From Pelomyxa schiedti (taxonomy: Eukaryota; Protista; Evosea), in the NCBI GenBank assembly GCA_020536535.1, contig JAHLWZ010000793.1, forward strand, positions 117,239 through 181,238: DNA of 64,000 nt, in the 5' to 3' direction. The notes under the pieces are model-generated. The model was not told where the DNA came from, searched no databases, and saw only the letters and a list, made by a program, of their open reading frames with translations. Position numbers and translations under genes: made by a program. Positions 17,537 to 64,000 of this stretch are shown one piece after another; the stretch's first letter is position 1, and each line of letters begins with the position of its first letter.

Positions 17537-18980
17537 GAGGTGTGAAACTAACAAGTGAGAAACGGGAGGGAGTGGCTCCTGATCTCCGAATCCCCTGAGA
17601 ACGTTCCTCCAATAATAATAATAGAGAACCTAAGGAGTCAAGATCCAAGTTTCTAAAAAATTAAACAAAAGAACCTCACTCTTCGATGGTGCGGACCCGG
17701 TTTTTGCGACACGACACGACACGATTTTTCTATGCATTTTTGACTTGTTGTTGTTTCTTCTAGTCATCTCGATCGCGAAGTCGATCTCCAGCCCGCTCGC
17801 GTTCGCGGTCACGTTCTCCACAGAGGAGCCCCAGGAGGTTTCTGCTCCACCATGGATAAAATACGTACTTACACTCCATTTTAAGGAGCTCGCCATACCG
17901 CGGCAGCAGCCGCGACCGAGCACACAGCACTTGTGTGTTTGTTGGGAATTTACCTTTCAACTTCCGTGAACGCGATGTTTACGACTACTTCGAGCGTTGT
18001 GGCCCGATTCGTAAGGTTACCATTGGCATGAACAGGTATTTTCCCAAGGTTTTTAACGCACACAAAGGGGAGCTCACAAGTTTTACTTTTTCGCCAGAAA
18101 CACCGGACAAAGCAGGGGATATGCCTTCGTCGACTTTGAGGACAGGCGTGACGCTGAAGATGCCTTTGAACGGTGCCTTTTTAGTTTTATATGGCGTACG
18201 AAACCTAACCTCCCAACAGTTACAATGGGTACGAGATATCTGGTCGTCGTTTGCGTCTTGATTGGGATGTCGGTCTTCCAAAGAAGATGCAAGTTTACAC
18301 AAGGCAGCGACGCCAGACCGGGGATTCCCGCTCGAGGTCCCGTTCTCCACGGTTTGTTTTCAATTCGTATTCCCCCGCATCACCACCACCTCACACTTCT
18401 GACAGGTACCGTTATAGGTCAAGGTCCAGATCATCGAGGAGCCCCTCAAAGTCAAGGTCGCGCTCGCCGCGGTCCCATTCACGTGGGAGGCACCACAAGT
18501 CGTCACACTCCAGGTCCCACTCACCCAAGAAAAACCACAGTATGTGATCGCTCCATTTTTTTAATGCTGGCCAGGATTTTTAACTTTAATTCTTCCAGGC
18601 TCGACTCCAGTGAAGACAGACCCCCAACCAACACACGATGCACCCGCCAATAACCCATAAGGTGGTGTCCTCTGTTGTGGAACAGGCTGATGATGATTTT
18701 TTTTGGGGACATAAGAAAATTGAAGAATGCCTGAATGGAAGAAGAAGAAGTGGATATTATGATGATTTGTGGAATTGTGGAATTGTGAATGTGGAATTGT
18801 TTAGAAACGACAGGAGGAGCAACTTTCTGTGCCCTTGGCCACAACAGCATGATGAAAGGAAAAAGAGATTTCTTTCTTTCTTTCCGGTCTTATCATCACC
18901 CTTTCTTCTTTCCCATTGTGTTAGTTACTCTGTGGGAGTTCACACTTTTGTGAGTCCCAGCCTCTTCATGGAGACACCAA
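17537..18980 (+). repeat. Direct repeat copy A (about 1.44 kb) containing the Tra2-like gene
   Basis: Aligns by eye with 22214-23642. The core 17724-18907 is near-identical to copy B at offset 4670, and the flanks are diverged but alignable. Confidence 0.9.
17686..18660 (+). CDS. SR-type splicing factor with RS-RRM-RS layout (Tra2/SR45a-like), copy 1
   Basis: ATG-only first coding exon (ATG|gtgcgg...tag|TCA TCT CGA), then an RS domain. RRM: CVFVGNLPFNFRERDVYDYFERCGPI..GQSRGYAFVDFEDRRDAEDAFERYNGYEISGRRLRLDWD. Second RS domain, ending APANNP*. Confidence 0.85.
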
Positions 18981-19045
18981 TGTGATTTGTCATCAATTTT
19001 CTATGAAAATATCTAATCTAACTTAAACCAGTTATAGCTTAGACC

Positions 19046-19790
19046 TCATCTAGTCATTGTGTTCCTATGGAGAAAATGATGACTCCCTACTTGGAGAATG
19101 ATCTGGAATGCTTTGTTTTTTTGGCCCTGTGGACCCTTGGGAAAAGATGGGCCAAATTGGGGTTTATTTCCACATTTTCTACACCACTGTGTACACACTT
19201 TGGGCCTTGAGACAAGCAGTTCGCCATTGACACGTTTGGAACCAGCAGGGAGGGAAACGCAGCCTGTATGGCAGACATGCACAGGATTCTGACCTTCGCA
19301 CCTGATGCCCACCCACTCATATCTGGGAACAGTCTCACCCCCAAACGATGCCTCAAAGGCAATGGGAATTGAGTGGGGGAAGCTTGCAGCCTACTTCAAT
19401 CTCCCTGGGGTCCAAGATTACCAAATCACAAGTGCAGTGTTTGCCTCAGCTGAGAGTGGGTCCAGGCTGCCAAGGGCAGCATGACGCAGAAGGACTACAT
19501 AAAGTTGCTCTTTACACACAGCACTCTCAGCCCTACATTGGCACAGCTTGCTTTGAGGCGGGTCTGTTGTGTTCAACCCAGTGTTTGACCCCCAGTCAAC
19601 TTCTGGCCCACCAAGACAACAGTCGCCAATCCTCTCAGCCCAGGGGTCAAGCATTCACTCTTTTCATTGAGTGCTGCAAAGGCATGGCACACAAAAGCAC
19701 ACATGGAGGCCTCTGGCACCAGGGAGCAAGGGTGGGGCCATGCTCTTTTACAAAGAGGTGGTAGTCGCGTGCCTCATCCAGAGCATGTGA
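19046..19790 (+). pseudogene. Possible decayed coding sequence
   Basis: About 50% GC block in which protein-like stretches (DKQFAIDTFG..., KAMGIEWGKLAAYFNLPGVQDYQI..., MTQKDYIKLLFTHSTLSPTLAQLALRR...) alternate between frames with stops and no obvious introns. Confidence 0.3.
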
Positions 19791-20077
19791 AATCGACTGT
19801 GGGCTGTTGACAACCTATTTTTTTGTTTTTTTTCCTACAATAGAAACATATGCTAAGTTGCCCCAACACCCAAAACTCAAAACCCAGTCGCCAGAGGGCG
19901 CCCACCAACCCAAAGGAATAAACATTTAGAAAGTCTAATCCCGTTAGCTCTTGAGGGTTACAAAACCCAAAGGGGAAAATAGTTGGGTGGGTTGTAGGTA
20001 GTAGGTAGTAGGTAGTAGCTCCACGGAAAGATAAAGTAGACGTGTGTGGTTGTTGTGCAATCACCAACTGGAACCCG

Positions 20078-21358
20078 TCACTCCAGACCATACCCGAGTA
20101 CATCGTACACAACTTCACCCAGCATCACCACTTGTTCTATGTCATCAATATGGTGATATGTAACTATGTCCTTGCGGTAGTTGGCATATGGCCCACCATG
20201 AGTCGAACCTGATGGAGTCCAAATCCACAGCACACCCGACTCGTCAATAAGTGTCGCGCCGCCCTCCTGCGCCATTCTGCTGACCATGACGTCGTCATAC
20301 TCCTCATAGGCAGCCTTTTTCAGGTCCCATGCGGGTAGAATTTTGCATATTCCTTGCAGGCAAGTCCTGGACATGATAACTCCACCTCCACTAGCCCACT
20401 TTCGCCTTGCAGGAAATCCTTAAGCAACGGTTAATGAGATACTTTTTGTTTTACAGTTCGGTACAATACCTTCAGGTGCAGGATGGTGCCACTGAACCGG
20501 GTCTTTACCGTGCAGATAACAGATCAATTGGATATCATTTGGGTTGTATCTGTATCGCCATTTAAAAAGGGCATATGGTATGGAAAGAGTTACTTGGAAA
20601 GTAATTTCAGTAAGTTGGGAGCCAAAACCAATCGTAATCGAAATTTTTAGTGGCACCTTCTGTTGCATTGCAAAGCCACCTGTAGTAAAGATAGAACTTT
20701 TGACAGAGTTCAGACATAGAGCCATCACCAATATTGGTGGAAATCACCGGGTAAATTCTTAGAAGATTAGTTGAGTAAAAATTGGACTTGAGTACTTAGA
20801 TCGGTGTTCAATTTGACGGACTTTGAGTTCCACATCTGGGGGGTTCCCACCAGAAATGAAATGAAAGGGAAACAAGCGGCCCCATCCAGTCAGTACCTTC
20901 TTCATCTCTGCATCATTGCGGGATGCCATATTGAATAAAATTCCCTCTGGCGTTCATCCATTATTGGCCATCCTCCTTGTTTGTGGGGTGGTGGGCATGA
21001 GCTTGCTTGCTGACTGCATGGTGGGGGAGTCGGTTTGTCAGCTAGTTGAGGGCAACTGCAATTGGATACAGGCGTAATGTCAGTGGCGGCAGCGGGAGCG
21101 GGAGCGAGAGTGGTACATCGACGCGGACTCTCCACAACCAACTGGAAATAGCCAAGACCAACTAGGTTCATGTTACTCTCAATCATTGGTACATCACCCC
21201 CCCCCCGCCCCAAAACTTAGGCACAAAGTTACAAAGACACAACCGCGGCGGGATACAATGAAACGACACGACTAGTAACTACGGCTAATTACTTACTTAC
21301 TTAGTGTTATTACGAGGGCAACCACTGCAACGAGAGCCAACACCAACAATTTCCTCAT
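20078..21358 (-). CDS. Type II membrane glycosyltransferase, GT31/Fringe/core-1 galactosyltransferase-like
   Basis: Signal anchor MRKLLVLALVAVVALVITLS and a Pro/Thr-rich stem. Then YRYNPNDIQLICYLHG, WASGGGVIMSRTCL (compare SGGAGYVLSR), EYDDVMVSRM (compare EDV) and VTYHHID. The DxD motif could not be placed. Confidence 0.55.
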
Positions 21359-22213
21359 TCCTTGTTTTGTTTTTAAGTTCGGCGGTCACCAGAGAAAAAC
21401 TTATTTGAAAAATCAACAGACCGGAACGCTGTCATTTTACGTTACCATCGCTCAGTCCTGGCGTTTTTTTTATTTAGCCATCTGGTGTTTAATTTTTGTC
21501 AGATGGAGCCAGCATGCATGGGTTTGTGTGTCTGTAGGGTTGTTGCCTTTGTGGAGATGAAGAGCACCTCTGTTTGCAACACAACAAAGATAGAGATATA
21601 TTATCTTTGTAATCTTTTTTCAATTTAGTTTTATATTAATGCACCCTTGTGAAGGTACAACAAAGTGCATAGCTTTGAAGATAAAAATAAACACATCATT
21701 GGTTGGGACCATCAATATTTTCCATGCAAATTCCATGTTCAGTTGGTATTTTGTGTAATGTGGTCAAAAACAATGTTGAAAAAATAAACTTACATAAGAT
21801 AAATTCCCCACAATTTTCAAACAGTGGCCATCCTCAGGTCTTTCCAGACCACTCATTAATGGAGCAAACCAATGCCAAACTAGCCAAAAAGAGATGCTTC
21901 AATCAAGTTGACATTCTTTACATCCTGACCAAAGAAAAACTTGTCACTTACACACAAGGTTACCAAAACAAGTTACTTATGAATAACTTTGACACAGACT
22001 TGAAAGTTGAGATCTAAAGGTGATACTGAAATCACTTTGTCTTGTGTCCTTACCCAATCAACTCCTTTCATTAAGATAGTGCAACTGCAAACTAGAAGTT
22101 TGGACCAGTTCCACTGGAGAGTAGGGCCAGAACCAGCACACAGGAGCACAAGTAGACACCACCTGAGAATAGTCCACAAGGAGCTCAACTTCATCACATG
22201 TAAATTGGTGGCT

Positions 22214-23642
22214 GAGGTGTGAAGCTAACAACTGAGAAACGAGTGAGTGGCTGGCTCCTGATCTCCGAACCCCCCCCTCCAATAATAGATAGAAGAAAAT
22301 TTAAAAAAAACTCAAAAAAAAAAAAGGAACTCTCCCACTCTTCGATGGTGCGGACCCGGTTTTTGCGACACGACACGACACGCTTCGTGGAGGATTTTTC
22401 TATGCATTTTTGACTTGTTGTTGTTTCTTCTAGTCATCTCGATCGCGAAGCCGATCTCCAGCCCGCTCGCGTTCGCGGTCACGTTCTCCACAGAGGAGCC
22501 CCAGGAGGTTTCTGCTCCACCATGGATAAAATACGTACTTACACTCCATTTTAAGGAGCTCGCCATACCGCGGCAGCAGCCGCGACCGAGCACACAGCAC
22601 TTGTGTGTTTGTTGGGAATTTACCTTTCAACTTCCGTGAACGCGATGTTTACGACTACTTCGAGCGTTGTGGCCCGATTCGTAAGGTTACCATTGGCATG
22701 AACAGGTATTTTCCCAAGGTTTTTAACGCACACAAAGGGGAGCTCACAAGTTTTACTTTTTCGCCAGAAACACCGGACAAAGCAGGGGATATGCCTTCGT
22801 CGACTTTGAGGACAGGCGTGACGCTGAAGATGCCTTTGAACGGTGCCTTTTTAGTTTTATATGGCGTACGAAACCTAACCTCCCAACAGTTACAATGGGT
22901 ACGAGATATCTGGTCGTCGTTTGCGTCTTGATTGGGATGTCGGTCTTCCAAAGAAGATGCAAGTTTACACAAGGCAGCGACGCCAGACCGGGGATTCCCG
23001 CTCGAGGTCCCGTTCTCCACGGTTTGTTTTCAATTCGTATTCCCCCGCATCACCACCACCTCACACTTCTGACAGGTACCGTTATAGGTCAAGGTCCAGA
23101 TCATCGAGGAGCCCCTCAAAGTCAAGGTCGCGCTCGCCGCGGTCCCATTCACGTGGGAGGCACCACAAGTCGTCACACTCCAGGTCCCACTCACCCAAGA
23201 AAAACCACAGTATGTGATCGCTCCATTTTTTTAATGCTGGCCAGGATTTTTAACTTTAATTCTTCCAGGCTCGACTCCAGTGAAGACAGACCCCCAACCA
23301 ACACACGATGCACCCGCCAATAACCCATAAGGTGGTGTCCTCTGTTGTGGAACAGGCTGATGATGATTTTTTTTGGGGACATAAGAAAATTGAAGAATGC
23401 CTGAATGGAAGAAGAAGAAGTGGATATTATGATGATTTGTGGAATTGTGGAATTGTGAATGTGGAATTGTTTAGAAACGACAGGAGGAGCAACTTTCTGT
23501 GCCCTTGGCCACAACAGCATGATGAAAGGAAAAAGAGATTTCTTTCTTTCTTTCCGGTCTTATCATCACCCTTTCTTTTTTTCTCGTTGTCTTAGGTATT
23601 CTGTGGGAGTCTTTTGGGAGTCCCAGCCTCTTCTGGACACAA
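22214..23642 (+). repeat. Direct repeat copy B containing the Tra2-like gene
   Basis: Aligns with 17537-18980; has an 11-nt insertion in intron 1 relative to copy A. Confidence 0.9.
22345..23330 (+). CDS. Tra2/SR45a-like SR splicing factor, copy 2
   Basis: Same exon structure and protein as 17686-18660. One synonymous change was noticed (AGT/AGC at 17781/22451). Confidence 0.85.
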
Positions 23643-23970
23643 CGTGGCGACGGGTCGATTTGCAAATGAAGCTGTCTGTATCCAACTTCATAAGAGAACC
23701 GTTTCTTGACTTGACTTGGAGGAGAAGTTGTCACGTGAGAACTCTGTACCTGCGAAACATCCCCACAGCAATGAATGAGGGGACCACCCAGTACCATTAA
23801 TTCGATTCTTGGATTTGCATTTATGCCAGTCATTTTATGGAATGTATAATTTTCCAGTAACCCCACCATGAAATGTTGTGAATGATTATTTGTGCATGTA
23901 GGTCATTGAGTTTATTATGCCAACTACAAAAAAATATCTTAGGTCTTTCCTGTGGTTTGGTGAACAAAAC

Positions 23971-26900
23971 TCAGTGGGTTGCTCTCTGAATCTGTTCAAC
24001 ACGCCTGCACACTTCTTCCACAGACACTCCCATTCCTTGGACAACCAAAGCCATCCTGTGGTATCCAGGTTAGATGGTTTATTGTCGTGTCGGCCCTGCA
24101 CACTTTTCTTTTGAGAGGTCCAAGAATGACTCTATCAAATCACCATCAATAAATCCATATGCTTCCTCGGTTCTTCTCTCGTTGGAGAAAGACCTCCACC
24201 TGTTTTTAGCACTTAGGTTAAATTGTAGTAGATTGAATGGAAGAAGCCTACTGTGAATGAAGGATTCCACCGACGCCGGAGATTACTGACGTGAGCTTAT
24301 TTTGTAAAGTCAGGAAGAAATCAAACGTCTCCTTTGACAGTGAAGCTACAACGCCGACCATGCCCCCCACTGTGCAAAATAGTACAGTAGAAAGTACAGG
24401 GGACTCATTTGTGTCCATCAGTTTCATAACAAGAGACCCTTCGGAAGAGTGAGCTATAAAATAAGGTGCTTTTTTTGCACACCATGTCTGAACTTGTTAA
24501 CATATTCACCCAAATAAAACTGTCCACACACATCCAGCCTCTGCCTTTCATCATCCGAAGTAGAATCACTATTTGTCTTCAGGGTAAATAAATTACAGGA
24601 ATTCTCTGCGGCTGTACAGAATGTGAGGAGGATATTTGTGGAAACATTTCCTTTGATACCTAAGTAGGTGTCTTCATCCAGAAACTCGATGGCAGTCAAC
24701 CAGTTTGGATTGAAATCTCTTGCAAGTTCAACCAGTTGTTGCTCGACTTCTTTATAACCAATTACCATCATGGATTTCATCAAGTCACCTTTATGGATGT
24801 GGGGTGGTTATTGGAAACAAGTTAAGTTGCAACACACCAACAATAGCAATATCACCACGTGAAACTAGCCAAAGAGCTAAAACATTAGTGTGGCAACTGC
24901 AATGATTCACTAAGGCTTTGCTGTGATGATACGATGAAGATGTTGAGGTGGAAGAAGACACTTGGGGAGTTTGCCATTCAAGAACTTTTACTTTGTCATT
25001 GACACTAGCTATAATTCGGCCCCCTACAAATGAATCTAGGGAGTAAACGGCCCCTTTGACTTGTCTCTCACATACAAGCTCCAGTGTGTGGTGCGAACAG
25101 TCAAAAACAAGCACTCGTCCTTTGGTGGGTTCCACTGGGCTTTTAAGTAAAAATAGAAAGAGACCAAGATGCAACCTTCATCTGGGTCAACGTAGGCAGT
25201 GCCAACGACGAAATAGGGCTTAGAACCACTTTCATCAGGGAGTTTTGTTGAAAGGATAGAACAGCCAGCTTCTTTGGCATCAAGCTCGAACTTGTGAATT
25301 GCTAAAGAATACGTGGGAATATGGAGAGGGATGGGGGGAGGGAGACATACTGTCGAATGTTTCAGAATTGATTAAACGTACATAGCTGACAGGATCGACA
25401 TCGTCATTTGTGATTGTTAGTACACAAAAATTCTTAGTTTCTTCCTGATTTTACGTCAGTCGTCACAGTAATTTGGAACAAGTACCTGATATGCTATCCT
25501 CCTTGGCATTTCTTCCAAAGGAATTGTTCTTATGTGTAGTTTCTGCATGTCATCAACACTCCCAACTTTAAGACCAGCTTCGGTAGCAAGGGCAATGCTG
25601 TTCGGTAGAAGGCGAGTATTGAGTGTGCACATGTGGGTCACCTCCTATCACAAATTAATAGAGGTGTATACAAAGAGATAATAAACCTTGATGTTGACAT
25701 TTGAAAATCTCAACTTGCCATTGGATGTATATACGAGTGTGGGTCGATCTGCAGCCACGAACACAGATGTGCCATGTTGATAGACATTGAGTGACAGGGG
25801 TGTGCTTGCCAGCCTAACTTTTTTTTTCTCCTTCAACTGGCCAGTCTGCGTTTTGAGATAATAGAGGCAACGTCATTCACTAGTGCTGGAGATAGAGAAA
25901 AATACATCTAGAACAAAGGAACAAAGAGTGCCATCTCCCATGCCACATAAAACATAGCTTACTCCCTCCATACTTGCATACATGACCGATCTAGCAATCG
26001 TTTCTGCATGTATGTAAGACTCAAGATTTCGTTTAATATTAACCTTCAAGGGTTGCCATGCACACAAGGTCCAGAGATGGGATCTTCAATACGTGAACGG
26101 ATAGATCACCCCAGAGCCCAACGACACCAATGCTTGAAAATGCTTCACCGAAAACGCCGACATCTACGCAAGATACTTCATTGGCCATCTTGGTTTTACT
26201 ACATTTAATCAGGGAGTGTAGAAAAACGACAATAGAAGTACCTGACTTGCACAATCTTATTGGCTTGAATTTCAAGGTAAAATAAGTTGCCATCACCAGT
26301 TGATAGTAGCACCTGCTGACTGTTGCACGAAACTACCTTTATTTGGGTCCCCTTTCCAGGTTCCCATTGTGACAGAAGGGTATAATTTGTGCCACTTACG
26401 AGGCGAATGCCTCCTGAAGTTACCTATGCATAGTTTAAGGATAATAAAAAAGATTGTCTACAGAACCTGAATAAAATTGCCATGCACAACATTACCACAA
26501 TACATGGACTGAACAGAACAATCGAAGCCTGGAATTTCAAACTCAGAGATTTCTTCTTCTCTGAAAGATAAAATCCTGGTCGCACTAACAAAAGACACTG
26601 AATCACGTTAATTTACTGTGCAAGCAGAAATGTACTACCAACTACAAATTCATCGAATTGTGGCTCGGTAGAAGACCGTAAAGACCACAGCCCTCTTAAA
26701 CCTGATTTGTTGTGAGTAGGAGTTGGTAGAACTATTCGAAACCAGTCAAATTTTCAAAAGAAGCTCTCTCAGACACTCCTACACCATTACTTATCACTCT
26801 AAGGGAACAATCTCGGTAGGCACCCGAGCAGGTAACAAGTTGACCCTTTTCAATCAGAAAGTTAAAAAGTTTAGCTGGAGAGACCCTCTACCTCTCCTTG

Positions 26901-28447
26901 CTTAGCTAGATCCACTACAACAAAATCAGGAGTAGGGCCAATATTGACAAACCTGTCAAGTACCTCAAAATTATCACCTGAACTGGTGTAAAGCCTACAA
27001 TAACTTAAGAGGCTTTCCATACCACTGGCATTCTTCTCACTCAGTAGTCTAATTAACTTAGAGTCACTGAACCGAGATCCTAGATACCAATTAGTAAACC
27101 TTGACTTAGAAGTTTTACCATCAACCTACAAATACAACTCCATTGTCTACATAGGAAATAGTAGACGCTGCACAAACCTAGATAAACTGTTACCATTATT
27201 TGGTTTCTGAAATAAATCAACCATTCCAATTGTGTCTAGTCGTATGTCGGCCAACTTTGAACGGGCTCTCTCCAAAGTGAGAACATACAATAGGCCTTGT
27301 TCATCACCAAGCAGAATGCGTTTTCCATCTTCATCAATCTTACCATACCTACACAACAACATACATTGAATATTTAGTCAAGTCCAATGGGAATGTGTAA
27401 CATACACCACCATAGTTGTGGGCTTCATGGAGAGAGCTTTGTAGCTTGCATGGTCAGCTGCAGCTGATGCTGCTGACGATGCCCCGGTGGCGGGTGTACT
27501 GGTTGGTTTTTGACCATTGTGGTATGTGATAGTCTGCTCACTTACGATGATAATGCCACCTTGGGGAGTAAAAAAAAAAAAGGAAAAAAAAAAGGTATTG
27601 ATACCTAATGGAGATGGAACGGGAATAAGCATTGTTGTCCCACTTTCGACATTACGTAGATCCCATGGGCCAGGTACAATCTCTAAATCAGACTAAAATG
27701 GTTAATGTTTCTAGTCATGTCAAAAATCAAAATAACGATTTCTTTTACATTCTGATCATGTGCTGTCAACTCATATGTCTTAACATGTCTTACATCTCCT
27801 GGAACTTGGTAAAGTACTACAAGTGTAGGTACACGTGTGTTGTATTGAAATTGAATGTCAATGATGTTGACTTCCTCCAGTCTAATTTGAAAACAAGAAT
27901 TAAGTCCCAAATGACTTGAGCAAACTCCAAACCTCAAATTATAAGCAGAAATGCTAGACGACATATTACGAGTCATTGGTATAACTTTAAGTATCCCATT
28001 GTACAATAGAAGGGCGGCTACTCGGAGGTTTGGGTCAATGGCCCCAAGCATTCCACCCTTATTACACCAATGAATATAAGTGTGAAAAGTGGCAGAAAAA
28101 CCTGACAAGGGATCCCCACTCTATCTCGGACATTGCATGTCCATTCAGTTTGGATTTCCCGTTTTATAGAATTATAAGAGAGAACGCATAAATGGTATTG
28201 TTCCGTGCAAATCATCAAATGGTCTTGTTTGCTTCCCTGCACATGTTACTAATGTCACCACGCAGTCTGTTTGTATTGCAACACACAGTGGGTCTGAACA
28301 CTTTAAACAATCCAACCCTGCCATACAGTGTGACATCAGCAAGTGGTGCAAGTCCATCTTCCACAACTTTGAAAATCTCCATTCTCGTACTTCGCCTGCC
28401 ATTTTGATAAAACTTAATACCAAGAAATAACCAGAGCCAGCAACAAA

Positions 28448-28515
<68 letters not shown>

Positions 28516-28778
28516 CGAGAGCAGGGAGACAAAAAAAAACCCCCAAAACAACCACCCCCGGCGTACACGATAATCAAATTGACATCAGTAGGAGATGTGA
28601 AATTGGCCATGGACGAGAAGTGAACAGCAGTTGGCTTGTGAGCAGTGACCACGTAGTTCCAGCATCTCCCCACGCCCCCTCCTCCGCCCCTAGCTGACGT
28701 CGTCGTAGACGTGCTCGCTGCGCTCGTGCTCGTGCTCGTGGATGTAGTCGCCGTCGATGTCGCCGTAGAACTCGCCAT
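23971..28778 (-). CDS. DDB1: DNA damage-binding protein 1 (CRL4 adaptor)
   Basis: [53 protein letters not shown]-like segment, [79 protein letters not shown]; ends [15 protein letters not shown]. Confidence 0.95.
28453..28514. repeat. 62-nt A homopolymer (poly-U in DDB1 intron 1)
   Basis: Counted directly; mirrored by 62 T at 54273-54334. Confidence 0.9.
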
Positions 28779-28874
28779 CACCTCGTCGCCACAGATAGAA
28801 TGGAAAAGTGGGCGATTAGAAAAAACCTCGGCGAGATCTGGTGGGCAGTTGCCAGTTAATAAAGACAAATTGCG

Positions 28875-53223: not shown

Positions 53224-53258
53224 ATCGAGCCTTGCTCAAAGCCAAGGGAATAAACATA

Positions 53259-53912
53259 TCAAAGAATACATTTTCCAGTTGCACTACGTATACGAACAAC
53301 CTGCAGCATGACATTTACAAAGCCCGCAAACTCCTTATCTTCTTCCAGTGCTTTATTAAGTAGTGCTTCCCTACTAACAGGGAGTAAGTTTTATTTTTGA
53401 AGCAATATCTTTCGAAAGATGAGAAAACCTCGCTTTTGGTGCACTGTCGATGCTTCTAATTTTTTCCTGCAAAGCGGGATTTTGCAAAAGTTTCCTCACT
53501 GTAACCGATGAAGCTAAAGGGAACATCAGAAGTCTCCAACAAAAAAAAAGGTAATAAGAAAGCACGACACACCAAGTTCAGAAAATTGTCTTGGCGTAAC
53601 GACATACACTTGATCGTCAATCACACGTGGGTGTAAACTGGGCTTGCACGGAGATTCTACTCATTGTCAAGTCGAAATTGTCTTTTTGGGGGACGATAAG
53701 AACCTTTATGCCTCTTCCAACAAGGCACAGAACAGCTTGTGGGAGCAAAAAAAAAAAAAAACCAACATTAGCTTAGGAAAGGAGAGTGGTGCCTCGAAAG
53801 GAAAGCACAACGAGGCGGTGAGACTTACACACAATTTGAGATCGCAAACAGGACACGTGTACTTGTGTGGCTGCGACGTGCATATTTCACACACCACCGG
53901 CTCGCCCGACAT
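53259..53912 (-). CDS. ZNHIT3: Mirror copy: ZNHIT3-like
   Basis: Reverse complement of 28875-29528. Confidence 0.78.
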
Positions 53913-54008
53913 CGCAATTTGTCTTTATTAACTGGCAACTGCCCACCAGATCTCGCCGAGGTTTTTTCTAATCGCCCACTTTTCCATTCTATCTGTGGCG
54001 ACGAGGTG

Positions 54009-54271
54009 ATGGCGAGTTCTACGGCGACATCGACGGCGACTACATCCACGAGCACGAGCACGAGCGCAGCGAGCACGTCTACGACGACGTCAGCTAGGGG
54101 CGGAGGAGGGGGCGTGGGGAGATGCTGGAACTACGTGGTCACTGCTCACAAGCCAACTGCTGTTCACTTCTCGTCCATGGCCAATTTCACATCTCCTACT
54201 GATGTCAATTTGATTATCGTGTACGCCGGGGGTGGTTGTTTTGGGGGTTTTTTTTTGTCTCCCTGCTCTCG

Positions 54272-54339
<68 letters not shown>

Positions 54340-57300
54340 TTTGTTGCTGGCTCTGGTTATTTCTTGGTATTAAGTTTTATCAAAATGGCAGGCGAAGTAC
54401 GAGAATGGAGATTTTCAAAGTTGTGGAAGATGGACTTGCACCACTTGCTGATGTCACACTGTATGGCAGGGTTGGATTGTTTAAAGTGTTCAGACCCACT
54501 GTGTGTTGCAATACAAACAGACTGCGTGGTGACATTAGTAACATGTGCAGGGAAGCAAACAAGACCATTTGATGATTTGCACGGAACAATACCATTTATG
54601 CGTTCTCTCTTATAATTCTATAAAACGGGAAATCCAAACTGAATGGACATGCAATGTCCGAGATAGAGTGGGGATCCCTTGTCAGGTTTTTCTGCCACTT
54701 TTCACACTTATATTCATTGGTGTAATAAGGGTGGAATGCTTGGGGCCATTGACCCAAACCTCCGAGTAGCCGCCCTTCTATTGTACAATGGGATACTTAA
54801 AGTTATACCAATGACTCGTAATATGTCGTCTAGCATTTCTGCTTATAATTTGAGGTTTGGAGTTTGCTCAAGTCATTTGGGACTTAATTCTTGTTTTCAA
54901 ATTAGACTGGAGGAAGTCAACATCATTGACATTCAATTTCAATACAACACACGTGTACCTACACTTGTAGTACTTTACCAAGTTCCAGGAGATGTAAGAC
55001 ATGTTAAGACATATGAGTTGACAGCACATGATCAGAATGTAAAAGAAATCGTTATTTTGATTTTTGACATGACTAGAAACATTAACCATTTTAGTCTGAT
55101 TTAGAGATTGTACCTGGCCCATGGGATCTACGTAATGTCGAAAGTGGGACAACAATGCTTATTCCCGTTCCATCTCCATTAGGTATCAATACCTTTTTTT
55201 TTTCCTTTTTTTTTTTTACTCCCCAAGGTGGCATTATCATCGTAAGTGAGCAGACTATCACATACCACAATGGTCAAAAACCAACCAGTACACCCGCCAC
55301 CGGGGCATCGTCAGCAGCATCAGCTGCAGCTGACCATGCAAGCTACAAAGCTCTCTCCATGAAGCCCACAACTATGGTGGTGTATGTTACACATTCCCAT
55401 TGGACTTGACTAAATATTCAATGTATGTTGTTGTGTAGGTATGGTAAGATTGATGAAGATGGAAAACGCATTCTGCTTGGTGATGAACAAGGCCTATTGT
55501 ATGTTCTCACTTTGGAGAGAGCCCGTTCAAAGTTGGCCGACATACGACTAGACACAATTGGAATGGTTGATTTATTTCAGAAACCAAATAATGGTAACAG
55601 TTTATCTAGGTTTGTGCAGCGTCTACTATTTCCTATGTAGACAATGGAGTTGTATTTGTAGGTTGATGGTAAAACTTCTAAGTCAAGGTTTACTAATTGG
55701 TATCTAGGATCTCGGTTCAGTGACTCTAAGTTAATTAGACTACTGAGTGAGAAGAATGCCAGTGGTATGGAAAGCCTCTTAAGTTATTGTAGGCTTTACA
55801 CCAGTTCAGGTGATAATTTTGAGGTACTTGACAGGTTTGTCAATATTGGCCCTACTCCTGATTTTGTTGTAGTGGATCTAGCTAAGCAAGGAGAGGTAGA
55901 GGGTCTCTCCAGCTAAACTTTTTAACTTTCTGATTGAAAAGGGTCAACTTGTTACCTGCTCGGGTGCCTACCGAGATTGTTCCCTTAGAGTGATAAGTAA
56001 TGGTGTAGGAGTGTCTGAGAGAGCTTCTTTTGAAAATTTGACTGGTTTCGAATAGTTCTACCAACTCCTACTCACAACAAATCAGGTTTAAGAGGGCTGT
56101 GGTCTTTACGGTCTTCTACCGAGCCACAATTCGATGAATTTGTAGTTGGTAGTACATTTCTGCTTGCACAGTAAATTAACGTGATTCAGTGTCTTTTGTT
56201 AGTGCGACCAGGATTTTATCTTTCAGAGAAGAAGAAATCTCTGAGTTTGAAATTCCAGGCTTCGATTGTTCTGTTCAGTCCATGTATTGTGGTAATGTTG
56301 TGCATGGCAATTTTATTCAGGTTCTGTAGACAATCTTTTTTATTATCCTTAAACTATGCATAGGTAACTTCAGGAGGCATTCGCCTCGTAAGTGGCACAA
56401 ATTATACCCTTCTGTCACAATGGGAACCTGGAAAGGGGACCCAAATAAAGGTAGTTTCGTGCAACAGTCAGCAGGTGCTACTATCAACTGGTGATGGCAA
56501 CTTATTTTACCTTGAAATTCAAGCCAATAAGATTGTGCAAGTCAGGTACTTCTATTGTCGTTTTTCTACACTCCCTGATTAAATGTAGTAAAACCAAGAT
56601 GGCCAATGAAGTATCTTGCGTAGATGTCGGCGTTTTCGGTGAAGCATTTTCAAGCATTGGTGTCGTTGGGCTCTGGGGTGATCTATCCGTTCACGTATTG
56701 AAGATCCCATCTCTGGACCTTGTGTGCATGGCAACCCTTGAAGGTTAATATTAAACGAAATCTTGAGTCTTACATACATGCAGAAACGATTGCTAGATCG
56801 GTCATGTATGCAAGTATGGAGGGAGTAAGCTATGTTTTATGTGGCATGGGAGATGGCACTCTTTGTTCCTTTGTTCTAGATGTATTTTTCTCTATCTCCA
56901 GCACTAGTGAATGACGTTGCCTCTATTATCTCAAAACGCAGACTGGCCAGTTGAAGGAGAAAAAAAAAGTTAGGCTGGCAAGCACACCCCTGTCACTCAA
57001 TGTCTATCAACATGGCACATCTGTGTTCGTGGCTGCAGATCGACCCACACTCGTATATACATCCAATGGCAAGTTGAGATTTTCAAATGTCAACATCAAG
57101 GTTTATTATCTCTTTGTATACACCTCTATTAATTTGTGATAGGAGGTGACCCACATGTGCACACTCAATACTCGCCTTCTACCGAACAGCATTGCCCTTG
57201 CTACCGAAGCTGGTCTTAAAGTTGGGAGTGTTGATGACATGCAGAAACTACACATAAGAACAATTCCTTTGGAAGAAATGCCAAGGAGGATAGCATATCA

Positions 57301-58816
57301 GGTACTTGTTCCAAATTACTGTGACGACTGACGTAAAATCAGGAAGAAACTAAGAATTTTTGTGTACTAACAATCACAAATGACGATGTCGATCCTGTCA
57401 GCTATGTACGTTTAATCAATTCTGAAACATTCGACAGTATGTCTCCCTCCCCCCATCCCTCTCCATATTCCCACGTATTCTTTAGCAATTCACAAGTTCG
57501 AGCTTGATGCCAAAGAAGCTGGCTGTTCTATCCTTTCAACAAAACTCCCTGATGAAAGTGGTTCTAAGCCCTATTTCGTCGTTGGCACTGCCTACGTTGA
57601 CCCAGATGAAGGTTGCATCTTGGTCTCTTTCTATTTTTACTTAAAAGCCCAGTGGAACCCACCAAAGGACGAGTGCTTGTTTTTGACTGTTCGCACCACA
57701 CACTGGAGCTTGTATGTGAGAGACAAGTCAAAGGGGCCGTTTACTCCCTAGATTCATTTGTAGGGGGCCGAATTATAGCTAGTGTCAATGACAAAGTAAA
57801 AGTTCTTGAATGGCAAACTCCCCAAGTGTCTTCTTCCACCTCAACATCTTCATCGTATCATCACAGCAAAGCCTTAGTGAATCATTGCAGTTGCCACACT
57901 AATGTTTTAGCTCTTTGGCTAGTTTCACGTGGTGATATTGCTATTGTTGGTGTGTTGCAACTTAACTTGTTTCCAATAACCACCCCACATCCATAAAGGT
58001 GACTTGATGAAATCCATGATGGTAATTGGTTATAAAGAAGTCGAGCAACAACTGGTTGAACTTGCAAGAGATTTCAATCCAAACTGGTTGACTGCCATCG
58101 AGTTTCTGGATGAAGACACCTACTTAGGTATCAAAGGAAATGTTTCCACAAATATCCTCCTCACATTCTGTACAGCCGCAGAGAATTCCTGTAATTTATT
58201 TACCCTGAAGACAAATAGTGATTCTACTTCGGATGATGAAAGGCAGAGGCTGGATGTGTGTGGACAGTTTTATTTGGGTGAATATGTTAACAAGTTCAGA
58301 CATGGTGTGCAAAAAAAGCACCTTATTTTATAGCTCACTCTTCCGAAGGGTCTCTTGTTATGAAACTGATGGACACAAATGAGTCCCCTGTACTTTCTAC
58401 TGTACTATTTTGCACAGTGGGGGGCATGGTCGGCGTTGTAGCTTCACTGTCAAAGGAGACGTTTGATTTCTTCCTGACTTTACAAAATAAGCTCACGTCA
58501 GTAATCTCCGGCGTCGGTGGAATCCTTCATTCACAGTAGGCTTCTTCCATTCAATCTACTACAATTTAACCTAAGTGCTAAAAACAGGTGGAGGTCTTTC
58601 TCCAACGAGAGAAGAACCGAGGAAGCATATGGATTTATTGATGGTGATTTGATAGAGTCATTCTTGGACCTCTCAAAAGAAAAGTGTGCAGGGCCGACAC
58701 GACAATAAACCATCTAACCTGGATACCACAGGATGGCTTTGGTTGTCCAAGGAATGGGAGTGTCTGTGGAAGAAGTGTGCAGGCGTGTTGAACAGATTCA
58801 GAGAGCAACCCACTGA
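54009..58816 (+). CDS. DDB1: Mirror copy: DDB1
   Basis: Reverse complement of 23971-28778. Confidence 0.93.
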
Positions 58817-59456
58817 GTTTTGTTCACCAAACCACAGGAAAGACCTAAGATATTTTTTTGTAGTTGGCATAATAAACTCAATGACCTACATGCACAAATA
58901 ATCATTCACAACATTTCATGGTGGGGTTACTGGAAAATTATACATTCCATAAAATGACTGGCATAAATGCAAATCCAAGAATCGAATTAATGGTACTGGG
59001 TGGTCCCCTCATTCATTGCTGTGGGGATGTTTCGCAGGTACAGAGTTCTCACGTGACAACTTCTCCTCCAAGTCAAGTCAAGAAACGGTTCTCTTATGAA
59101 GTTGGATACAGACAGCTTCATTTGCAAATCGACCCGTCGCCACGTTGTGTCCAGAAGAGGCTGGGACTCCCAAAAGACTCCCACAGAATACCTAAGACAA
59201 CGAGAAAAAAAGAAAGGGTGATGATAAGACCGGAAAGAAAGAAAGAAATCTCTTTTTCCTTTCATCATGCTGTTGTGGCCAAGGGCACAGAAAGTTGCTC
59301 CTCCTGTCGTTTCTAAACAATTCCACATTCACAATTCCACAATTCCACAAATCATCATAATATCCACTTCTTCTTCTTCCATTCAGGCATTCTTCAATTT
59401 TCTTATGTCCCCAAAAAAAATCATCATCAGCCTGTTCCACAACAGAGGACACCACC

Positions 59457-60442
59457 TTATGGGTTATTGGCGGGTGCATCGTGTGTTGGTTGGGGGTCTG
59501 TCTTCACTGGAGTCGAGCCTGGAAGAATTAAAGTTAAAAATCCTGGCCAGCATTAAAAAAATGGAGCGATCACATACTGTGGTTTTTCTTGGGTGAGTGG
59601 GACCTGGAGTGTGACGACTTGTGGTGCCTCCCACGTGAATGGGACCGCGGCGAGCGCGACCTTGACTTTGAGGGGCTCCTCGATGATCTGGACCTTGACC
59701 TATAACGGTACCTGTCAGAAGTGTGAGGTGGTGGTGATGCGGGGGAATACGAATTGAAAACAAACCGTGGAGAACGGGACCTCGAGCGGGAATCCCCGGT
59801 CTGGCGTCGCTGCCTTGTGTAAACTTGCATCTTCTTTGGAAGACCGACATCCCAATCAAGACGCAAACGACGACCAGATATCTCGTACCCATTGTAACTG
59901 TTGGGAGGTTAGGTTTCGTACGCCATATAAAACTAAAAAGGCACCGTTCAAAGGCATCTTCAGCGTCACGCCTGTCCTCAAAGTCGACGAAGGCATATCC
60001 CCTGCTTTGTCCGGTGTTTCTGGCGAAAAAGTAAAACTTGTGAGCTCCCCTTTGTGTGCGTTAAAAACCTTGGGAAAATACCTGTTCATGCCAATGGTAA
60101 CCTTACGAATCGGGCCACAACGCTCGAAGTAGTCGTAAACATCGCGTTCACGGAAGTTGAAAGGTAAATTCCCAACAAACACACAAGTGCTGTGTGCTCG
60201 GTCGCGGCTGCTGCCGCGGTATGGCGAGCTCCTTAAAATGGAGTGTAAGTACGTATTTTATCCATGGTGGAGCAGAAACCTCCTGGGGCTCCTCTGTGGA
60301 GAACGTGACCGCGAACGCGAGCGGGCTGGAGATCGGCTTCGCGATCGAGATGACTAGAAGAAACAACAACAAGTCAAAAATGCATAGAAAAATCCTCCAC
60401 GAAGCGTGTCGTGTCGTGTCGCAAAAACCGGGTCCGCACCAT
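59457..60442 (-). CDS. Mirror copy: Tra2-like SR protein (copy 3)
   Basis: Reverse complement of 22345-23330; carries the copy-2 allele. Confidence 0.83.
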
Positions 60443-61428
60443 CGAAGAGTGGGAGAGTTCCTTTTTTTTTTTTGAGTTTTTTTTAAATTTTCTTCTATCT
60501 ATTATTGGAGGGGGGGGTTCGGAGATCAGGAGCCAGCCACTCACTCGTTTCTCAGTTGTTAGCTTCACACCTCAGCCACCAATTTACATGTGATGAAGTT
60601 GAGCTCCTTGTGGACTATTCTCAGGTGGTGTCTACTTGTGCTCCTGTGTGCTGGTTCTGGCCCTACTCTCCAGTGGAACTGGTCCAAACTTCTAGTTTGC
60701 AGTTGCACTATCTTAATGAAAGGAGTTGATTGGGTAAGGACACAAGACAAAGTGATTTCAGTATCACCTTTAGATCTCAACTTTCAAGTCTGTGTCAAAG
60801 TTATTCATAAGTAACTTGTTTTGGTAACCTTGTGTGTAAGTGACAAGTTTTTCTTTGGTCAGGATGTAAAGAATGTCAACTTGATTGAAGCATCTCTTTT
60901 TGGCTAGTTTGGCATTGGTTTGCTCCATTAATGAGTGGTCTGGAAAGACCTGAGGATGGCCACTGTTTGAAAATTGTGGGGAATTTATCTTATGTAAGTT
61001 TATTTTTTCAACATTGTTTTTGACCACATTACACAAAATACCAACTGAACATGGAATTTGCATGGAAAATATTGATGGTCCCAACCAATGATGTGTTTAT
61101 TTTTATCTTCAAAGCTATGCACTTTGTTGTACCTTCACAAGGGTGCATTAATATAAAACTAAATTGAAAAAAGATTACAAAGATAATATATCTCTATCTT
61201 TGTTGTGTTGCAAACAGAGGTGCTCTTCATCTCCACAAAGGCAACAACCCTACAGACACACAAACCCATGCATGCTGGCTCCATCTGACAAAAATTAAAC
61301 ACCAGATGGCTAAATAAAAAAAACGCCAGGACTGAGCGATGGTAACGTAAAATGACAGCGTTCCGGTCTGTTGATTTTTCAAATAAGTTTTTCTCTGGTG
61401 ACCGCCGAACTTAAAAACAAAACAAGGA

Positions 61429-62709
61429 ATGAGGAAATTGTTGGTGTTGGCTCTCGTTGCAGTGGTTGCCCTCGTAATAACACTAAGTAAGTAAGTAATT
61501 AGCCGTAGTTACTAGTCGTGTCGTTTCATTGTATCCCGCCGCGGTTGTGTCTTTGTAACTTTGTGCCTAAGTTTTGGGGCGGGGGGGGGGTGATGTACCA
61601 ATGATTGAGAGTAACATGAACCTAGTTGGTCTTGGCTATTTCCAGTTGGTTGTGGAGAGTCCGCGTCGATGTACCACTCTCGCTCCCGCTCCCGCTGCCG
61701 CCACTGACATTACGCCTGTATCCAATTGCAGTTGCCCTCAACTAGCTGACAAACCGACTCCCCCACCATGCAGTCAGCAAGCAAGCTCATGCCCACCACC
61801 CCACAAACAAGGAGGATGGCCAATAATGGATGAACGCCAGAGGGAATTTTATTCAATATGGCATCCCGCAATGATGCAGAGATGAAGAAGGTACTGACTG
61901 GATGGGGCCGCTTGTTTCCCTTTCATTTCATTTCTGGTGGGAACCCCCCAGATGTGGAACTCAAAGTCCGTCAAATTGAACACCGATCTAAGTACTCAAG
62001 TCCAATTTTTACTCAACTAATCTTCTAAGAATTTACCCGGTGATTTCCACCAATATTGGTGATGGCTCTATGTCTGAACTCTGTCAAAAGTTCTATCTTT
62101 ACTACAGGTGGCTTTGCAATGCAACAGAAGGTGCCACTAAAAATTTCGATTACGATTGGTTTTGGCTCCCAACTTACTGAAATTACTTTCCAAGTAACTC
62201 TTTCCATACCATATGCCCTTTTTAAATGGCGATACAGATACAACCCAAATGATATCCAATTGATCTGTTATCTGCACGGTAAAGACCCGGTTCAGTGGCA
62301 CCATCCTGCACCTGAAGGTATTGTACCGAACTGTAAAACAAAAAGTATCTCATTAACCGTTGCTTAAGGATTTCCTGCAAGGCGAAAGTGGGCTAGTGGA
62401 GGTGGAGTTATCATGTCCAGGACTTGCCTGCAAGGAATATGCAAAATTCTACCCGCATGGGACCTGAAAAAGGCTGCCTATGAGGAGTATGACGACGTCA
62501 TGGTCAGCAGAATGGCGCAGGAGGGCGGCGCGACACTTATTGACGAGTCGGGTGTGCTGTGGATTTGGACTCCATCAGGTTCGACTCATGGTGGGCCATA
62601 TGCCAACTACCGCAAGGACATAGTTACATATCACCATATTGATGACATAGAACAAGTGGTGATGCTGGGTGAAGTTGTGTACGATGTACTCGGGTATGGT
62701 CTGGAGTGA
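61429..62709 (+). CDS. Mirror copy: GT31-like glycosyltransferase
   Basis: Reverse complement of 20078-21358. Confidence 0.53.
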
Positions 62710-64000
62710 CGGGTTCCAGTTGGTGATTGCACAACAACCACACACGTCTACTTTATCTTTCCGTGGAGCTACTACCTACTACCTACTACCTACAACCCAC
62801 CCAACTATTTTCCCCTTTGGGTTTTGTAACCCTCAAGAGCTAACGGGATTAGACTTTCTAAATGTTTATTCCTTTGGGTTGGTGGGCGCCCTCTGGCGAC
62901 TGGGTTTTGAGTTTTGGGTGTTGGGGCAACTTAGCATATGTTTCTATTGTAGGAAAAAAAACAAAAAAATAGGTTGTCAACAGCCCACAGTCGATTTCAC
63001 ATGCTCTGGATGAGGCACGCGACTACCACCTCTTTGTAAAAGAGCATGGCCCCACCCTTGCTCCCTGGTGCCAGAGGCCTCCATGTGTGCTTTTGTGTGC
63101 CATGCCTTTGCAGCACTCAATGAAAAGAGTGAATGCTTGACCCCTGGGCTGAGAGGATTGGCGACTGTTGTCTTGGTGGGCCAGAAGTTGACTGGGGGTC
63201 AAACACTGGGTTGAACACAACAGACCCGCCTCAAAGCAAGCTGTGCCAATGTAGGGCTGAGAGTGCTGTGTGTAAAGAGCAACTTTATGTAGTCCTTCTG
63301 CGTCATGCTGCCCTTGGCAGCCTGGACCCACTCTCAGCTGAGGCAAACACTGCACTTGTGATTTGGTAATCTTGGACCCCAGGGAGATTGAAGTAGGCTG
63401 CAAGCTTCCCCCACTCAATTCCCATTGCCTTTGAGGCATCGTTTGGGGGTGAGACTGTTCCCAGATATGAGTGGGTGGGCATCAGGTGCGAAGGTCAGAA
63501 TCCTGTGCATGTCTGCCATACAGGCTGCGTTTCCCTCCCTGCTGGTTCCAAACGTGTCAATGGCGAACTGCTTGTCTCAAGGCCCAAAGTGTGTACACAG
63601 TGGTGTAGAAAATGTGGAAATAAACCCCAATTTGGCCCATCTTTTCCCAAGGGTCCACAGGGCCAAAAAAACAAAGCATTCCAGATCATTCTCCAAGTAG
63701 GGAGTCATCATTTTCTCCATAGGAACACAATGACTAGATGAGGTCTAAGCTATAACTGGTTTAAGTTAGATTAGATATTTTCATAGAAAATTGATGACAA
63801 ATCACATTGGTGTCTCCATGAAGAGGCTGGGACTCACAAAAGTGTGAACTCCCACAGAGTAACTAACACAATGGGAAAGAAGAAAGGGTGATGATAAGAC
63901 CGGAAAGAAAGAAAGAAATCTCTTTTTCCTTTCATCATGCTGTTGTGGCCAAGGGCACAGAAAGTTGCTCCTCCTGTCGTTTCTAAACAATTCCACATTC

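What the first reader, a model, noticed from the sequence alone, without database searches (positions are those of the whole stretch)
18787..64000. Giant apparently perfect palindrome (at least 45 kb) duplicating 11 genes, including housekeeping genes
Seen: every mirrored ORF pair sums to 82787 with identical translations. Even the 62-nt intronic homopolymer has the same length in both arms, and the symmetry is still intact at the window edge. Knowledge: real large palindromes occur in amoebozoans and ciliates (extrachromosomal rDNA palindromes of Dictyostelium, Physarum and Tetrahymena) and in fold-back (breakage-fusion-bridge) amplification. However, inverted chimeras with a short unique spacer are the classic artefact of phi29 multiple displacement amplification and of fold-back long reads. 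Inference: no divergence seen and non-rDNA content favour an artefact or a very recent event. A real non-rDNA palindromic amplicon would be notable.
Basis: partly seen in the sequence, partly recalled or inferred. Interest (0 to 1): 0.8.

Follow-up and report, generated by a model that had tools for sequence, protein, structure and literature searches.

The report
Fold-back assembly artefact in amoeba contig
The perfect 45-kb "palindrome" is really in the deposited sequence, but it sits at the very end of a contig assembled from phi29-amplified single-cell DNA of the amoeba Pelomyxa schiedti, so it is most likely an amplification and assembly fold-back and the second copy of ten genes probably does not exist.

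Summary
Observation confirmed. Arms 18787-41206 and 41581-64000 (22,420 bp each) are exact reverse complements with 0 mismatches, around a 374-nt spacer that is not self-complementary.

New facts:
- The window is the last 64,000 nt of Pelomyxa schiedti contig JAHLWZ010000793.1 (181,238 bp). The "still intact at the window edge" symmetry simply stops at the contig end.
- The contig ends exactly 121 nt into a 1126-nt exact repeat. 121 is the largest k in the published SPAdes run. The arm end is therefore a de Bruijn graph vertex, and the arms are probably identical because the same graph edges were spelled twice.
- The DNA was GenomiPhi (phi29) amplified from seven single cells and sequenced with Illumina and Nanopore. 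Inverted chimeras dominate such data, and their modal jump distance (250-300 nt) is close to the 374-nt spacer.

No rRNA and no telomere repeats were found. No independent sequence covers the spacer.

Verdict: MDA inverted chimera propagated by the assembler, about 0.78. Pelo_10274-10283 are probably spurious duplicates of Pelo_10264-10273. A real palindrome (about 0.1) cannot be excluded without read depth and junction reads.

The scan noted other perfect palindromes on other pieces of this genome (s1-377961, s1-400217). They were not followed up, and I did not check them.

The parts
18787..41206 (.). Left arm, 22,420 bp; probably the only genuine copy. It continues leftwards without a break into 158 kb of unique contig.
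   Evidence: 0 mismatches against the reverse complement of 41581-64000. Carries annotated genes Pelo_10264-10273.
41207..41580 (.). Unique 374-nt spacer. The left half is 40% GC and A/C-rich; the right half is 71% GC, 52% G, with a G4-like motif at 41451. Probably genuine sequence next to the arm, with one of its two junctions chimeric.
   Evidence: No annotated gene, no Pfam hit, and no homologue or independent contig.
41581..64000 (.). Right arm, 22,420 bp, running to the last base of the contig. Probably a spurious second spelling of the left arm (Pelo_10274-10283).
   Evidence: Window 64000 = record 181,238 = contig length.
63880..64000 (.). Terminal 121-mer of the contig. It is the first 121-mer, coming from the unique side, that is shared by repeat copies A and B.
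   Evidence: The last 121-mer occurs at 18787(-), 23457(-), 59210(+) and 63880(+). The last 122-mer occurs only at 18787(-) and 63879(+). The largest SPAdes k was 121.
17782..18907 (+). Exact 1126-nt block of repeat copy A (the whole copy is 17537-18976; RRM-domain gene). The mirror of the right arm stops 121 nt inside it.
22452..23577 (+). Exact 1126-nt block of repeat copy B (the whole copy is 22214-23641; RRM gene Pelo_10265, about 22645-23330). Its mirror B' lies at 59210-60335.
20078..21358 (-). Hypothetical gene, 160 aa (mirror 61429-62709, +).
   Evidence: Gene table of L002, mapped to the window through.
23971..28778 (-). RSE1/DDB1/CPSF-A family gene, 1156 aa (SF3B3- or DDB1-like); mirror 54009-58816 (+). 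The A62 run at 28453-28514 lies within this gene's span.
   Evidence: PF10433, PF23726, PF03178.
29564..31289 (-). CytochromB561_N-domain gene, 376 aa; mirror 51498-53223 (+).
31479..32618 (+). Hypothetical gene, 240 aa; mirror 50169-51308 (-).
32706..33553 (-). CS-domain gene, 222 aa; mirror 49234-50081 (+).
33825..36543 (+). WD40 beta-propeller gene; striatin-like is my reading of the exon translations, not a tool assignment. It is modelled as 624 aa in one arm and 674 aa in the other. Mirror 46244-48962 (-).
36611..38673 (-). Gene of 487 or 501 aa with no Pfam hit on record. Scan note s1-396646 reads it as a pentameric ligand-gated channel. Mirror 44114-46176 (+).
38722..39435 (+). HAD_SAK_2 phosphatase-like gene, 185 aa, annotated twice (Pelo_10272 and Pelo_10275; KAH3757978.1 and KAH3757981.1). 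Mirror 43352-44065 (-).
39661..41125 (+). Hypothetical gene nearest the centre, modelled as 307 aa in one arm and 333 aa in the other. Mirror 41662-43126 (-).

Best explanation
The inverted duplication is a technical fold-back. During phi29 multiple displacement amplification of single Pelomyxa schiedti cells, a growing strand that had copied the arm and the 374-nt segment after it was displaced. Its 3' end re-annealed about 374 nt back on the opposite strand and was extended, giving an inverted chimeric molecule (arm, spacer, reverse complement of arm). Reads carrying that one chimeric junction gave the SPAdes graph a link from the spacer into the conjugate (reverse-complement) edges of the arm. 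The path extender followed this link, probably because the true continuation lies beyond a 71% GC, G-rich stretch that was poorly covered. It then walked back along the same edges, supported by all the genuine reads of the arm, until it met a branching vertex at the 1126-nt exact repeat, where the contig ends. Shown here: the structure, the contig-end position, the k=121 signature, and the amplification and assembly history. Inferred: the chimeric molecule, the loss of the true continuation, and which of the two spacer junctions is false. Consequence: the genome probably holds one copy of 18787-41206, and genes Pelo_10274-10283 are probably duplicate annotations.
For: (1) Provenance. The window's HAD gene product is Pelo_10272/Pelo_10275 of P. 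schiedti on JAHLWZ010000793.1 in GCA_020536535.1, and rc(L001) matches window 33352-54065 exactly. The genome paper states that the DNA was GenomiPhi whole-genome amplified from seven single cells. It also describes Illumina reads, Nanopore reads of T7-endonuclease-treated WGA DNA, and a co-assembly with SPAdes 3.11.1 --sc at k up to 121. (2) The right arm is terminal: window 64000 = record 181,238 = contig length, and locus L002 is cut there. (3) The contig ends exactly 121 nt into a 1126-nt exact repeat. The last 121-mer is shared by both repeat copies and the last 122-mer is not. The contig was therefore spelled from k=121 graph edges, which makes 0 mismatches in 22,420 bp and equal 62-nt homopolymers expected by construction. 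(4) MDA chimeras are 85-91% inverted. Their jump distance is usually under 10 kb with a mode of 250-300 nt, and 72-76% of long reads from MDA DNA are chimeric. The spacer is 374 nt. (5) Precedent: inverted duplications in a hybrid assembly of WGA DNA (gorilla Y) disappeared when palindromic reads were corrected, and palindromic MDA reads derail assemblies. (6) The content is ordinary single-copy nuclear genes, with no rRNA and no telomere repeats. (7) Unchecked leads: other perfect palindromes were noted on other contigs of the same assembly.
Against: No reads could be examined, so depth over the arm and the number and origin of junction-spanning reads are unknown. No contig or protein carrying the expected true continuation beyond the spacer was found. 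That search only reaches called proteins and is weak. Seven independent amplifications were co-assembled, so the true continuation should often have been covered and a low-coverage chimeric link should often have been pruned in --sc mode. Every structural feature (perfect arms, unique spacer, arm end at a repeat) would look the same if a real, nearly perfect palindrome had been assembled with a de Bruijn graph.
Confidence: 0.78

Rival explanations
1. A real, very recent or homogenised palindromic duplication in the Pelomyxa genome: a fold-back inversion after a break, a breakage-fusion-bridge product, or a palindromic (iso)chromosome end. Its arms would be at least 22.4 kb around a 374-nt centre. 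The assembler collapsed both arms into the same graph edges and spelled them twice.
For: The structure is exactly that of a natural palindrome with a unique spacer. A de Bruijn assembler would give the same contig for a real palindrome, ending at the first unresolved repeat. No alternative continuation from the spacer was found. The G-rich, G4-prone right half of the spacer could stall replication in vivo. Amoebozoans are known, from general knowledge, to keep palindromic extrachromosomal rDNA.
Against: No rRNA genes and no telomere repeats; the content is ordinary single-copy nuclear genes. The DNA was phi29-amplified and read with Nanopore, where inverted chimeras with this spacing are the rule. 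The fold-back is at a contig terminus and no outer boundary leads into a second, different flank. Similar perfect palindromes were reported on other contigs of this assembly, including one carrying NRPS modules (unchecked). That pattern points to the method more than to the locus.
Confidence: 0.1
2. A technical fold-back of another origin. It could be a Nanopore ligation-library fold-back or template-complement read. It could be an Illumina library hairpin chimera. Or the assembler alone could have created a hairpin at a dead-end tip without any chimeric molecule from MDA.
For: Ligation-based Nanopore libraries (SQK-LSK108 was used here) are reported to produce inverted-repeat chimeric reads (abstract of PMC13141652). 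The terminal position and the k=121 end fit any artefact that feeds a false link into the graph.
Against: A template-complement read-through turns at the physical end of a fragment. It should give a palindrome with no spacer, or only adapter sequence, not 374 nt of unique and compositionally normal sequence. A de Bruijn graph cannot link an edge to its conjugate without some read or k-mer that carries the junction.
Confidence: 0.1

Closest known systems
Inverted chimeras of phi29 multiple displacement amplification (mechanism of Lasken and Stockwell 2007, as reviewed in PMC9984789)
   Same: Two segments of one locus are joined on opposite strands. The jump distance is short (374 nt here; reported mode 250-300 nt, usually under 10 kb). 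The source DNA was GenomiPhi-amplified.
   Different: What is seen here is an assembled contig, not a read. The 22.4-kb arm length was set by the assembly graph, not by the size of a chimeric molecule. The short overlap at the junction cannot be seen without the true continuation.
Inverted duplications in assemblies of whole-genome-amplified DNA (gorilla Y hybrid assembly; Pacasus paper, PMC6218980)
   Same: Artificial inverted duplications of genes appear in contigs built from WGA long reads plus short reads, and they disappear once palindromic reads are split.
   Different: Different organism, sequencing platform (PacBio) and assembler. Here no corrected re-assembly exists to show the duplication vanishing.
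Natural palindromic extrachromosomal rDNA of Dictyostelium, Physarum and Tetrahymena (general knowledge)
   Same: Large, nearly perfect inverted arms around a short non-palindromic centre, and the Dictyostelium case is also an amoebozoan.
   Different: Those elements carry rRNA genes and end in telomeres. This window has no Rfam rRNA match and no telomere-like tandem repeat, and it is joined to 158 kb of ordinary chromosome sequence.
Fold-back inversions and breakage-fusion-bridge palindromes, and the gene-conversion-maintained palindromes of sex chromosomes (general knowledge)
   Same: Inverted duplication of ordinary genes with a short unique spacer.
   Different: Those are shown by doubled depth, independent junction reads and distinct outer flanks. 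None of these can be shown here, and the outer end here is an assembly boundary.

Membership tests
MDA (phi29) inverted chimera carried into an assembly | The sequenced DNA was amplified by phi29 strand-displacement amplification | tested here: met
   The window lies on GCA_020536535.1 contig JAHLWZ010000793.1. The paper states Illustra Single Cell GenomiPhi WGA of single cells.
MDA (phi29) inverted chimera carried into an assembly | Two adjacent segments map to opposite strands of the same locus | tested here: met
   Arms are exact reverse complements.
MDA (phi29) inverted chimera carried into an assembly | Short chimeric distance (usually under 10 kb, mode 250-300 nt) | tested here: met
   The spacer is 374 nt; the distribution is quoted from PMC9984789.
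MDA (phi29) inverted chimera carried into an assembly | [quoted passage not shown] | not testable with these tools
   Any overlap is absorbed into the inner ends of the arms. Seeing it needs the true continuation beyond the spacer, which was not found.
MDA (phi29) inverted chimera carried into an assembly | The junction is private to one amplification reaction and absent from unamplified DNA; depth over the arm is 1x | not testable with these tools
MDA (phi29) inverted chimera carried into an assembly | The extent of the duplicated arm is set by the assembly graph | tested here: met
   The right arm ends at the contig end, exactly k=121 nt into a 1126-nt exact repeat (k).
Natural genomic palindrome (fold-back or BFB product, ampliconic palindrome) | Near-identical inverted arms around a unique spacer | tested here: met
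   This is uninformative, because the assembler spells both arms from the same edges.
Natural genomic palindrome (fold-back or BFB product, ampliconic palindrome) | An outer boundary where the two arms lead into different flanking sequences (or into telomeres) | tested here: not met
   The left arm runs on into unique sequence. The right arm ends at the contig end inside a repeat, with no second flank and no telomere repeat.
Natural genomic palindrome (fold-back or BFB product, ampliconic palindrome) | Doubled read depth and independent molecules spanning both junctions in unamplified DNA | not testable with these tools
   No reads available.
Extrachromosomal rDNA palindrome (Dictyostelium, Physarum, Tetrahymena type) | Carries rRNA genes | tested here: not met
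   No Rfam match at gathering score in the 64 kb; the genes are ordinary nuclear genes.
Extrachromosomal rDNA palindrome (Dictyostelium, Physarum, Tetrahymena type) | A free linear element whose arms end in telomeres | tested here: not met
   The palindrome is joined to the rest of a 181-kb contig, and there are no telomere-like tandem repeats.

The most novel reading that the evidence does not exclude
Pelomyxa schiedti really carries a perfect palindromic duplication of at least 45 kb of ordinary single-copy nuclear genes. It could be a fold-back chromosome end or a palindromic chromosome arm that may extend far beyond the 22.4 kb the assembler could spell. The other perfect palindromes noted in this assembly would then be further examples of a genome-wide habit.
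Probability: 0.1. Interest if true: 0.6.

Novelty: not a real feature. Interest (0 to 1): 0.1.

Why it matters
As biology it probably does not matter, because the second arm most likely does not exist in the cell. As a data-quality matter it does. About 22.8 kb of this GenBank contig is probably redundant, and ten annotated proteins (Pelo_10274-10283, for example KAH3757981.1 against KAH3757978.1) are probably redundant with it. Such fold-backs would inflate gene counts and duplicated-BUSCO figures; the genome paper reports 8.6% duplicated. They can also mislead searches for paralogues, hairpin RNAs or inverted duplications in this genome. The test used here is simple and can be reused on the other palindromes the scan flagged in this assembly: does a perfect inverted arm end at a contig end, exactly k nt into an exact repeat? 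If the palindrome were real, it would be a rare non-rDNA giant palindrome in an amoebozoan.

Tried and rejected
(1) I looked for independent sequence across the spacer.
- An exact look-up of the 149-aa ORF that spans the whole spacer and both junctions found nothing.
- A homology search with that ORF found nothing.
- An exhaustive HMMER search with the other open frame of the spacer (77 aa, proline-rich) gave only three low-complexity matches at 29-48% identity.
- Exact look-ups of nine window ORFs found none in the collection.
So neither a contig carrying a true continuation nor an independent assembly of the junctions could be found. This is uninformative, not evidence either way.

(2) rDNA palindrome or free linear element: rejected, because there is no rRNA and there are no telomere repeats.

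(3) Scaffolding join: rejected, because there is no N in the window.

(4) Nanopore template-complement read-through as the sole cause: unlikely, because the turn holds 374 nt of unique sequence.

(5) Other inverted repeats in 1-41600 that might mark further chimeras: only three weak pairs at 72-81% complementarity.

(6) Recurrence of such palindromes on other contigs could not be tested with my own tools. I have only unchecked scan notes.

(7) I could not decide which of the two spacer junctions is the false one from sequence alone. Both the arm|spacer and the arm|reverse-spacer joins look compositionally plausible.


Full report
**1. The observation**

I tested every position i against 82787-i. 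Positions 18787-41206 are the exact reverse complement of 41581-64000: 22,420 bp per arm with no mismatch. All 284 non-complementary positions fall in 41207-41580. Self-BLAST gives the same single 22,420-bp, 100% hit.

The 374-nt centre is mismatched to its own reverse complement at 284 of 374 positions. That is what unrelated sequence gives, so the centre is a unique spacer and not a smaller palindrome. The A62 run (28453-28514) is mirrored by a T62 run (54273-54334). The only other repeat in the window is a 1.45-kb segment carrying an RRM-domain gene. It has copies at 17537-18976 and 22214-23641, plus mirrors, and the copies are 95% identical.

**2. Where the window comes from**

- The HAD-like ORF at 38713-39213 hits one protein, annotated twice as Pelo_10272 and Pelo_10275 of Pelomyxa schiedti (KAH3757978.1 and KAH3757981.1).
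- That protein is encoded on contig JAHLWZ010000793.1 of GCA_020536535.1, which is 181,238 bp long.
- The reverse complement of locus L001 (record 150,590-171,303) matches window 33352-54065 exactly. Window position x is therefore record position x+117,238.
- Window 64000 is then record 181,238, the last base of the contig. A second locus, fetched through the RRM protein Pelo_10282, is cut at record 181,238 and confirms this.

So the symmetry is "still intact at the window edge" only because the contig stops there. The structure is 158 kb of ordinary contig, then the spacer, then a terminal fold-back of 22.4 kb.

**3. Gene content**

The GenBank annotation has ten genes per arm: Pelo_10264-10273 on the left and Pelo_10274-10283 mirrored on the right.

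- a 160-aa hypothetical
- an RRM protein
- an RSE1/DDB1/CPSF-A family protein of 1156 aa
- a CytochromB561_N protein
- a 240-aa hypothetical
- a CS-domain protein
- a WD40 propeller protein
- a 487/501-aa protein that a scan note reads as a ligand-gated channel
- a HAD_SAK_2 protein
- a 307/333-aa hypothetical next to the centre

Mirrored copies of identical DNA carry different gene models: 307 vs 333, 487 vs 501, 674 vs 624 and 131 vs 157 aa. There is no rRNA or other Rfam family and no telomere-like tandem repeat. The spacer has no annotated gene, no Pfam hit and no homologue.

**4. The assembly signature**

Repeat copies A and B share an exact block of 1126 nt, 17782-18907 = 22452-23577. 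The mirror of the contig's last base is 18787, and 18907-18787+1 = 121.

- The contig's last 121-mer occurs in both repeat copies on both arms.
- The last 122-mer occurs only in copy A and its mirror.
- The contig therefore ends on the first 121-mer that is no longer unique, which is a branching vertex of a de Bruijn graph at k=121.
- The genome paper reports SPAdes 3.11.1 in --sc mode with k = 21 to 121.

Two things follow. The first is direct: the arm length is an assembly boundary and not a biological one. The second is inference from how such assemblers work: a contig that runs through an edge and later through its conjugate spells exactly the same bases twice. Zero divergence over 22 kb and equal 62-nt homopolymers are then expected by construction. 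They say nothing about the age or the reality of a duplication.

**5. How the DNA was made**

The paper (PMC8887013) gives these methods.

- DNA was whole-genome amplified from micromanipulated single cells with the Illustra Single Cell GenomiPhi kit (phi29).
- Seven such samples were sequenced with Illumina.
- Two were also sequenced with Nanopore, as an SQK-LSK108 ligation library of T7-endonuclease-I-treated WGA DNA.
- All reads were co-assembled with SPAdes.

The review PMC9984789 gives the expected artefact profile.

- 85-91% of MDA chimeras are inverted.
- They form within one molecule, with a jump distance usually under 10 kb and a mode of 250-300 nt.
- 72-76% of long reads from MDA DNA are chimeric.

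The spacer here, 374 nt, is that jump distance. PMC6218980 describes numerous inverted duplications in a hybrid assembly of WGA DNA (gorilla Y). They vanished when palindromic reads were corrected, and de-branching did not remove them. PMC13265396 shows that palindromic MDA Nanopore reads derail assembly.

**6. Most likely mechanism**

- A nascent strand copied the arm and the next 374 nt.
- It was displaced, re-annealed to the opposite strand at the inner end of the arm, and was extended. This gave an arm-spacer-reverse-arm molecule.
- Its single false junction entered the graph.
- The right half of the spacer is 71% GC and 52% G, with a G4-like run. Such sequence is poorly covered after MDA, so the true continuation may have been a dead end and the false link the only way on.
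- Once on the conjugate edges, every genuine read of the arm supports the walk, which continued until the repeat vertex.

The structure, the provenance and the k signature are shown. The chimeric molecule, the lost continuation and the identity of the false junction are inferred.

**7. What I could not do**

The decisive evidence is in the reads: depth over the arm and junction reads per cell. No tool here reaches them.

- Attempts to find an independent contig or protein covering the spacer or its continuation all came back empty. This is uninformative.
- A real, nearly perfect palindrome assembled by SPAdes would look identical, so I keep about 0.1 for it.
- Against the real reading stand four points. 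The genes are ordinary nuclear genes with no rRNA. No second outer flank or telomere is present. The fold-back is terminal on its contig. The method strongly favours such artefacts.
- The scan's own notes list further perfect palindromes on other pieces of this assembly: a 39.7-kb piece that is one palindrome (s1-377961) and an 8.2-kb palindrome of NRPS modules (s1-400217). I could not check these. If confirmed, they would point to the method and not to this locus.

**8. Verdict**

The interpretation as an artefact is the best supported: about 0.78 for an MDA inverted chimera, about 0.1 for another technical fold-back, and about 0.1 for a real palindrome. It is not a new biological feature. 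Its practical value is as a warning that about 22.8 kb and ten gene models of this GenBank contig are probably redundant, and as a quick test for the other palindromes flagged in this genome.

Noticed in passing
window 17537-18976 and 22214-23641 (mirrors 59146-60573 and 63811-64000): Two direct copies of an RRM-domain gene lie 4.67 kb apart. They share a 1126-nt block with no difference, while the remaining roughly 330 aligned nt are only about 79% identical. That sharp step suggests recent gene conversion, or a collapsed graph edge used twice by the assembler.
   Followed up: partly
window 16781-16869: An uninterrupted run of 89 A lies outside the palindrome, inside long ORFs on both strands. 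The arms also carry an A62/T62 run. Homopolymers this long in an MDA-based Illumina and Nanopore assembly may not have reliable lengths.
   Followed up: no
L001 and L002 gene tables (window 33825-41125 and mirrors; 22645-23330 and mirror): Identical DNA in the two arms received different gene models (307 vs 333 aa, 487 vs 501 aa, 674 vs 624 aa, 131 vs 157 aa). The published gene predictions at this locus are therefore not reproducible from sequence alone.
   Followed up: no
window 41394-41580: The right half of the spacer is 71% GC and 52% G on the + strand, with a G4-like motif at 41451. On the - strand it has two open frames rich in Pro, Ser and Ala, with no homologue. It may be the truncated 3' end of a neighbouring gene whose remainder is missing from this contig.
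   Followed up: partly
window 36611-38673 (-) and 44114-46176 (+): An annotated gene of 487/501 aa has no Pfam family on record. A first-stage note (s1-396646) reads it as a divergent pentameric ligand-gated ion channel. If the palindrome is an artefact, there is only one such gene here.
   Followed up: no
window about 6400-12800 (+): Exon-sized ORFs here look like a Brr2/SNRNP200-type spliceosomal helicase. This is my reading of the translations and was not scanned against Pfam. It lies in the unique part left of the palindrome.
   Followed up: no
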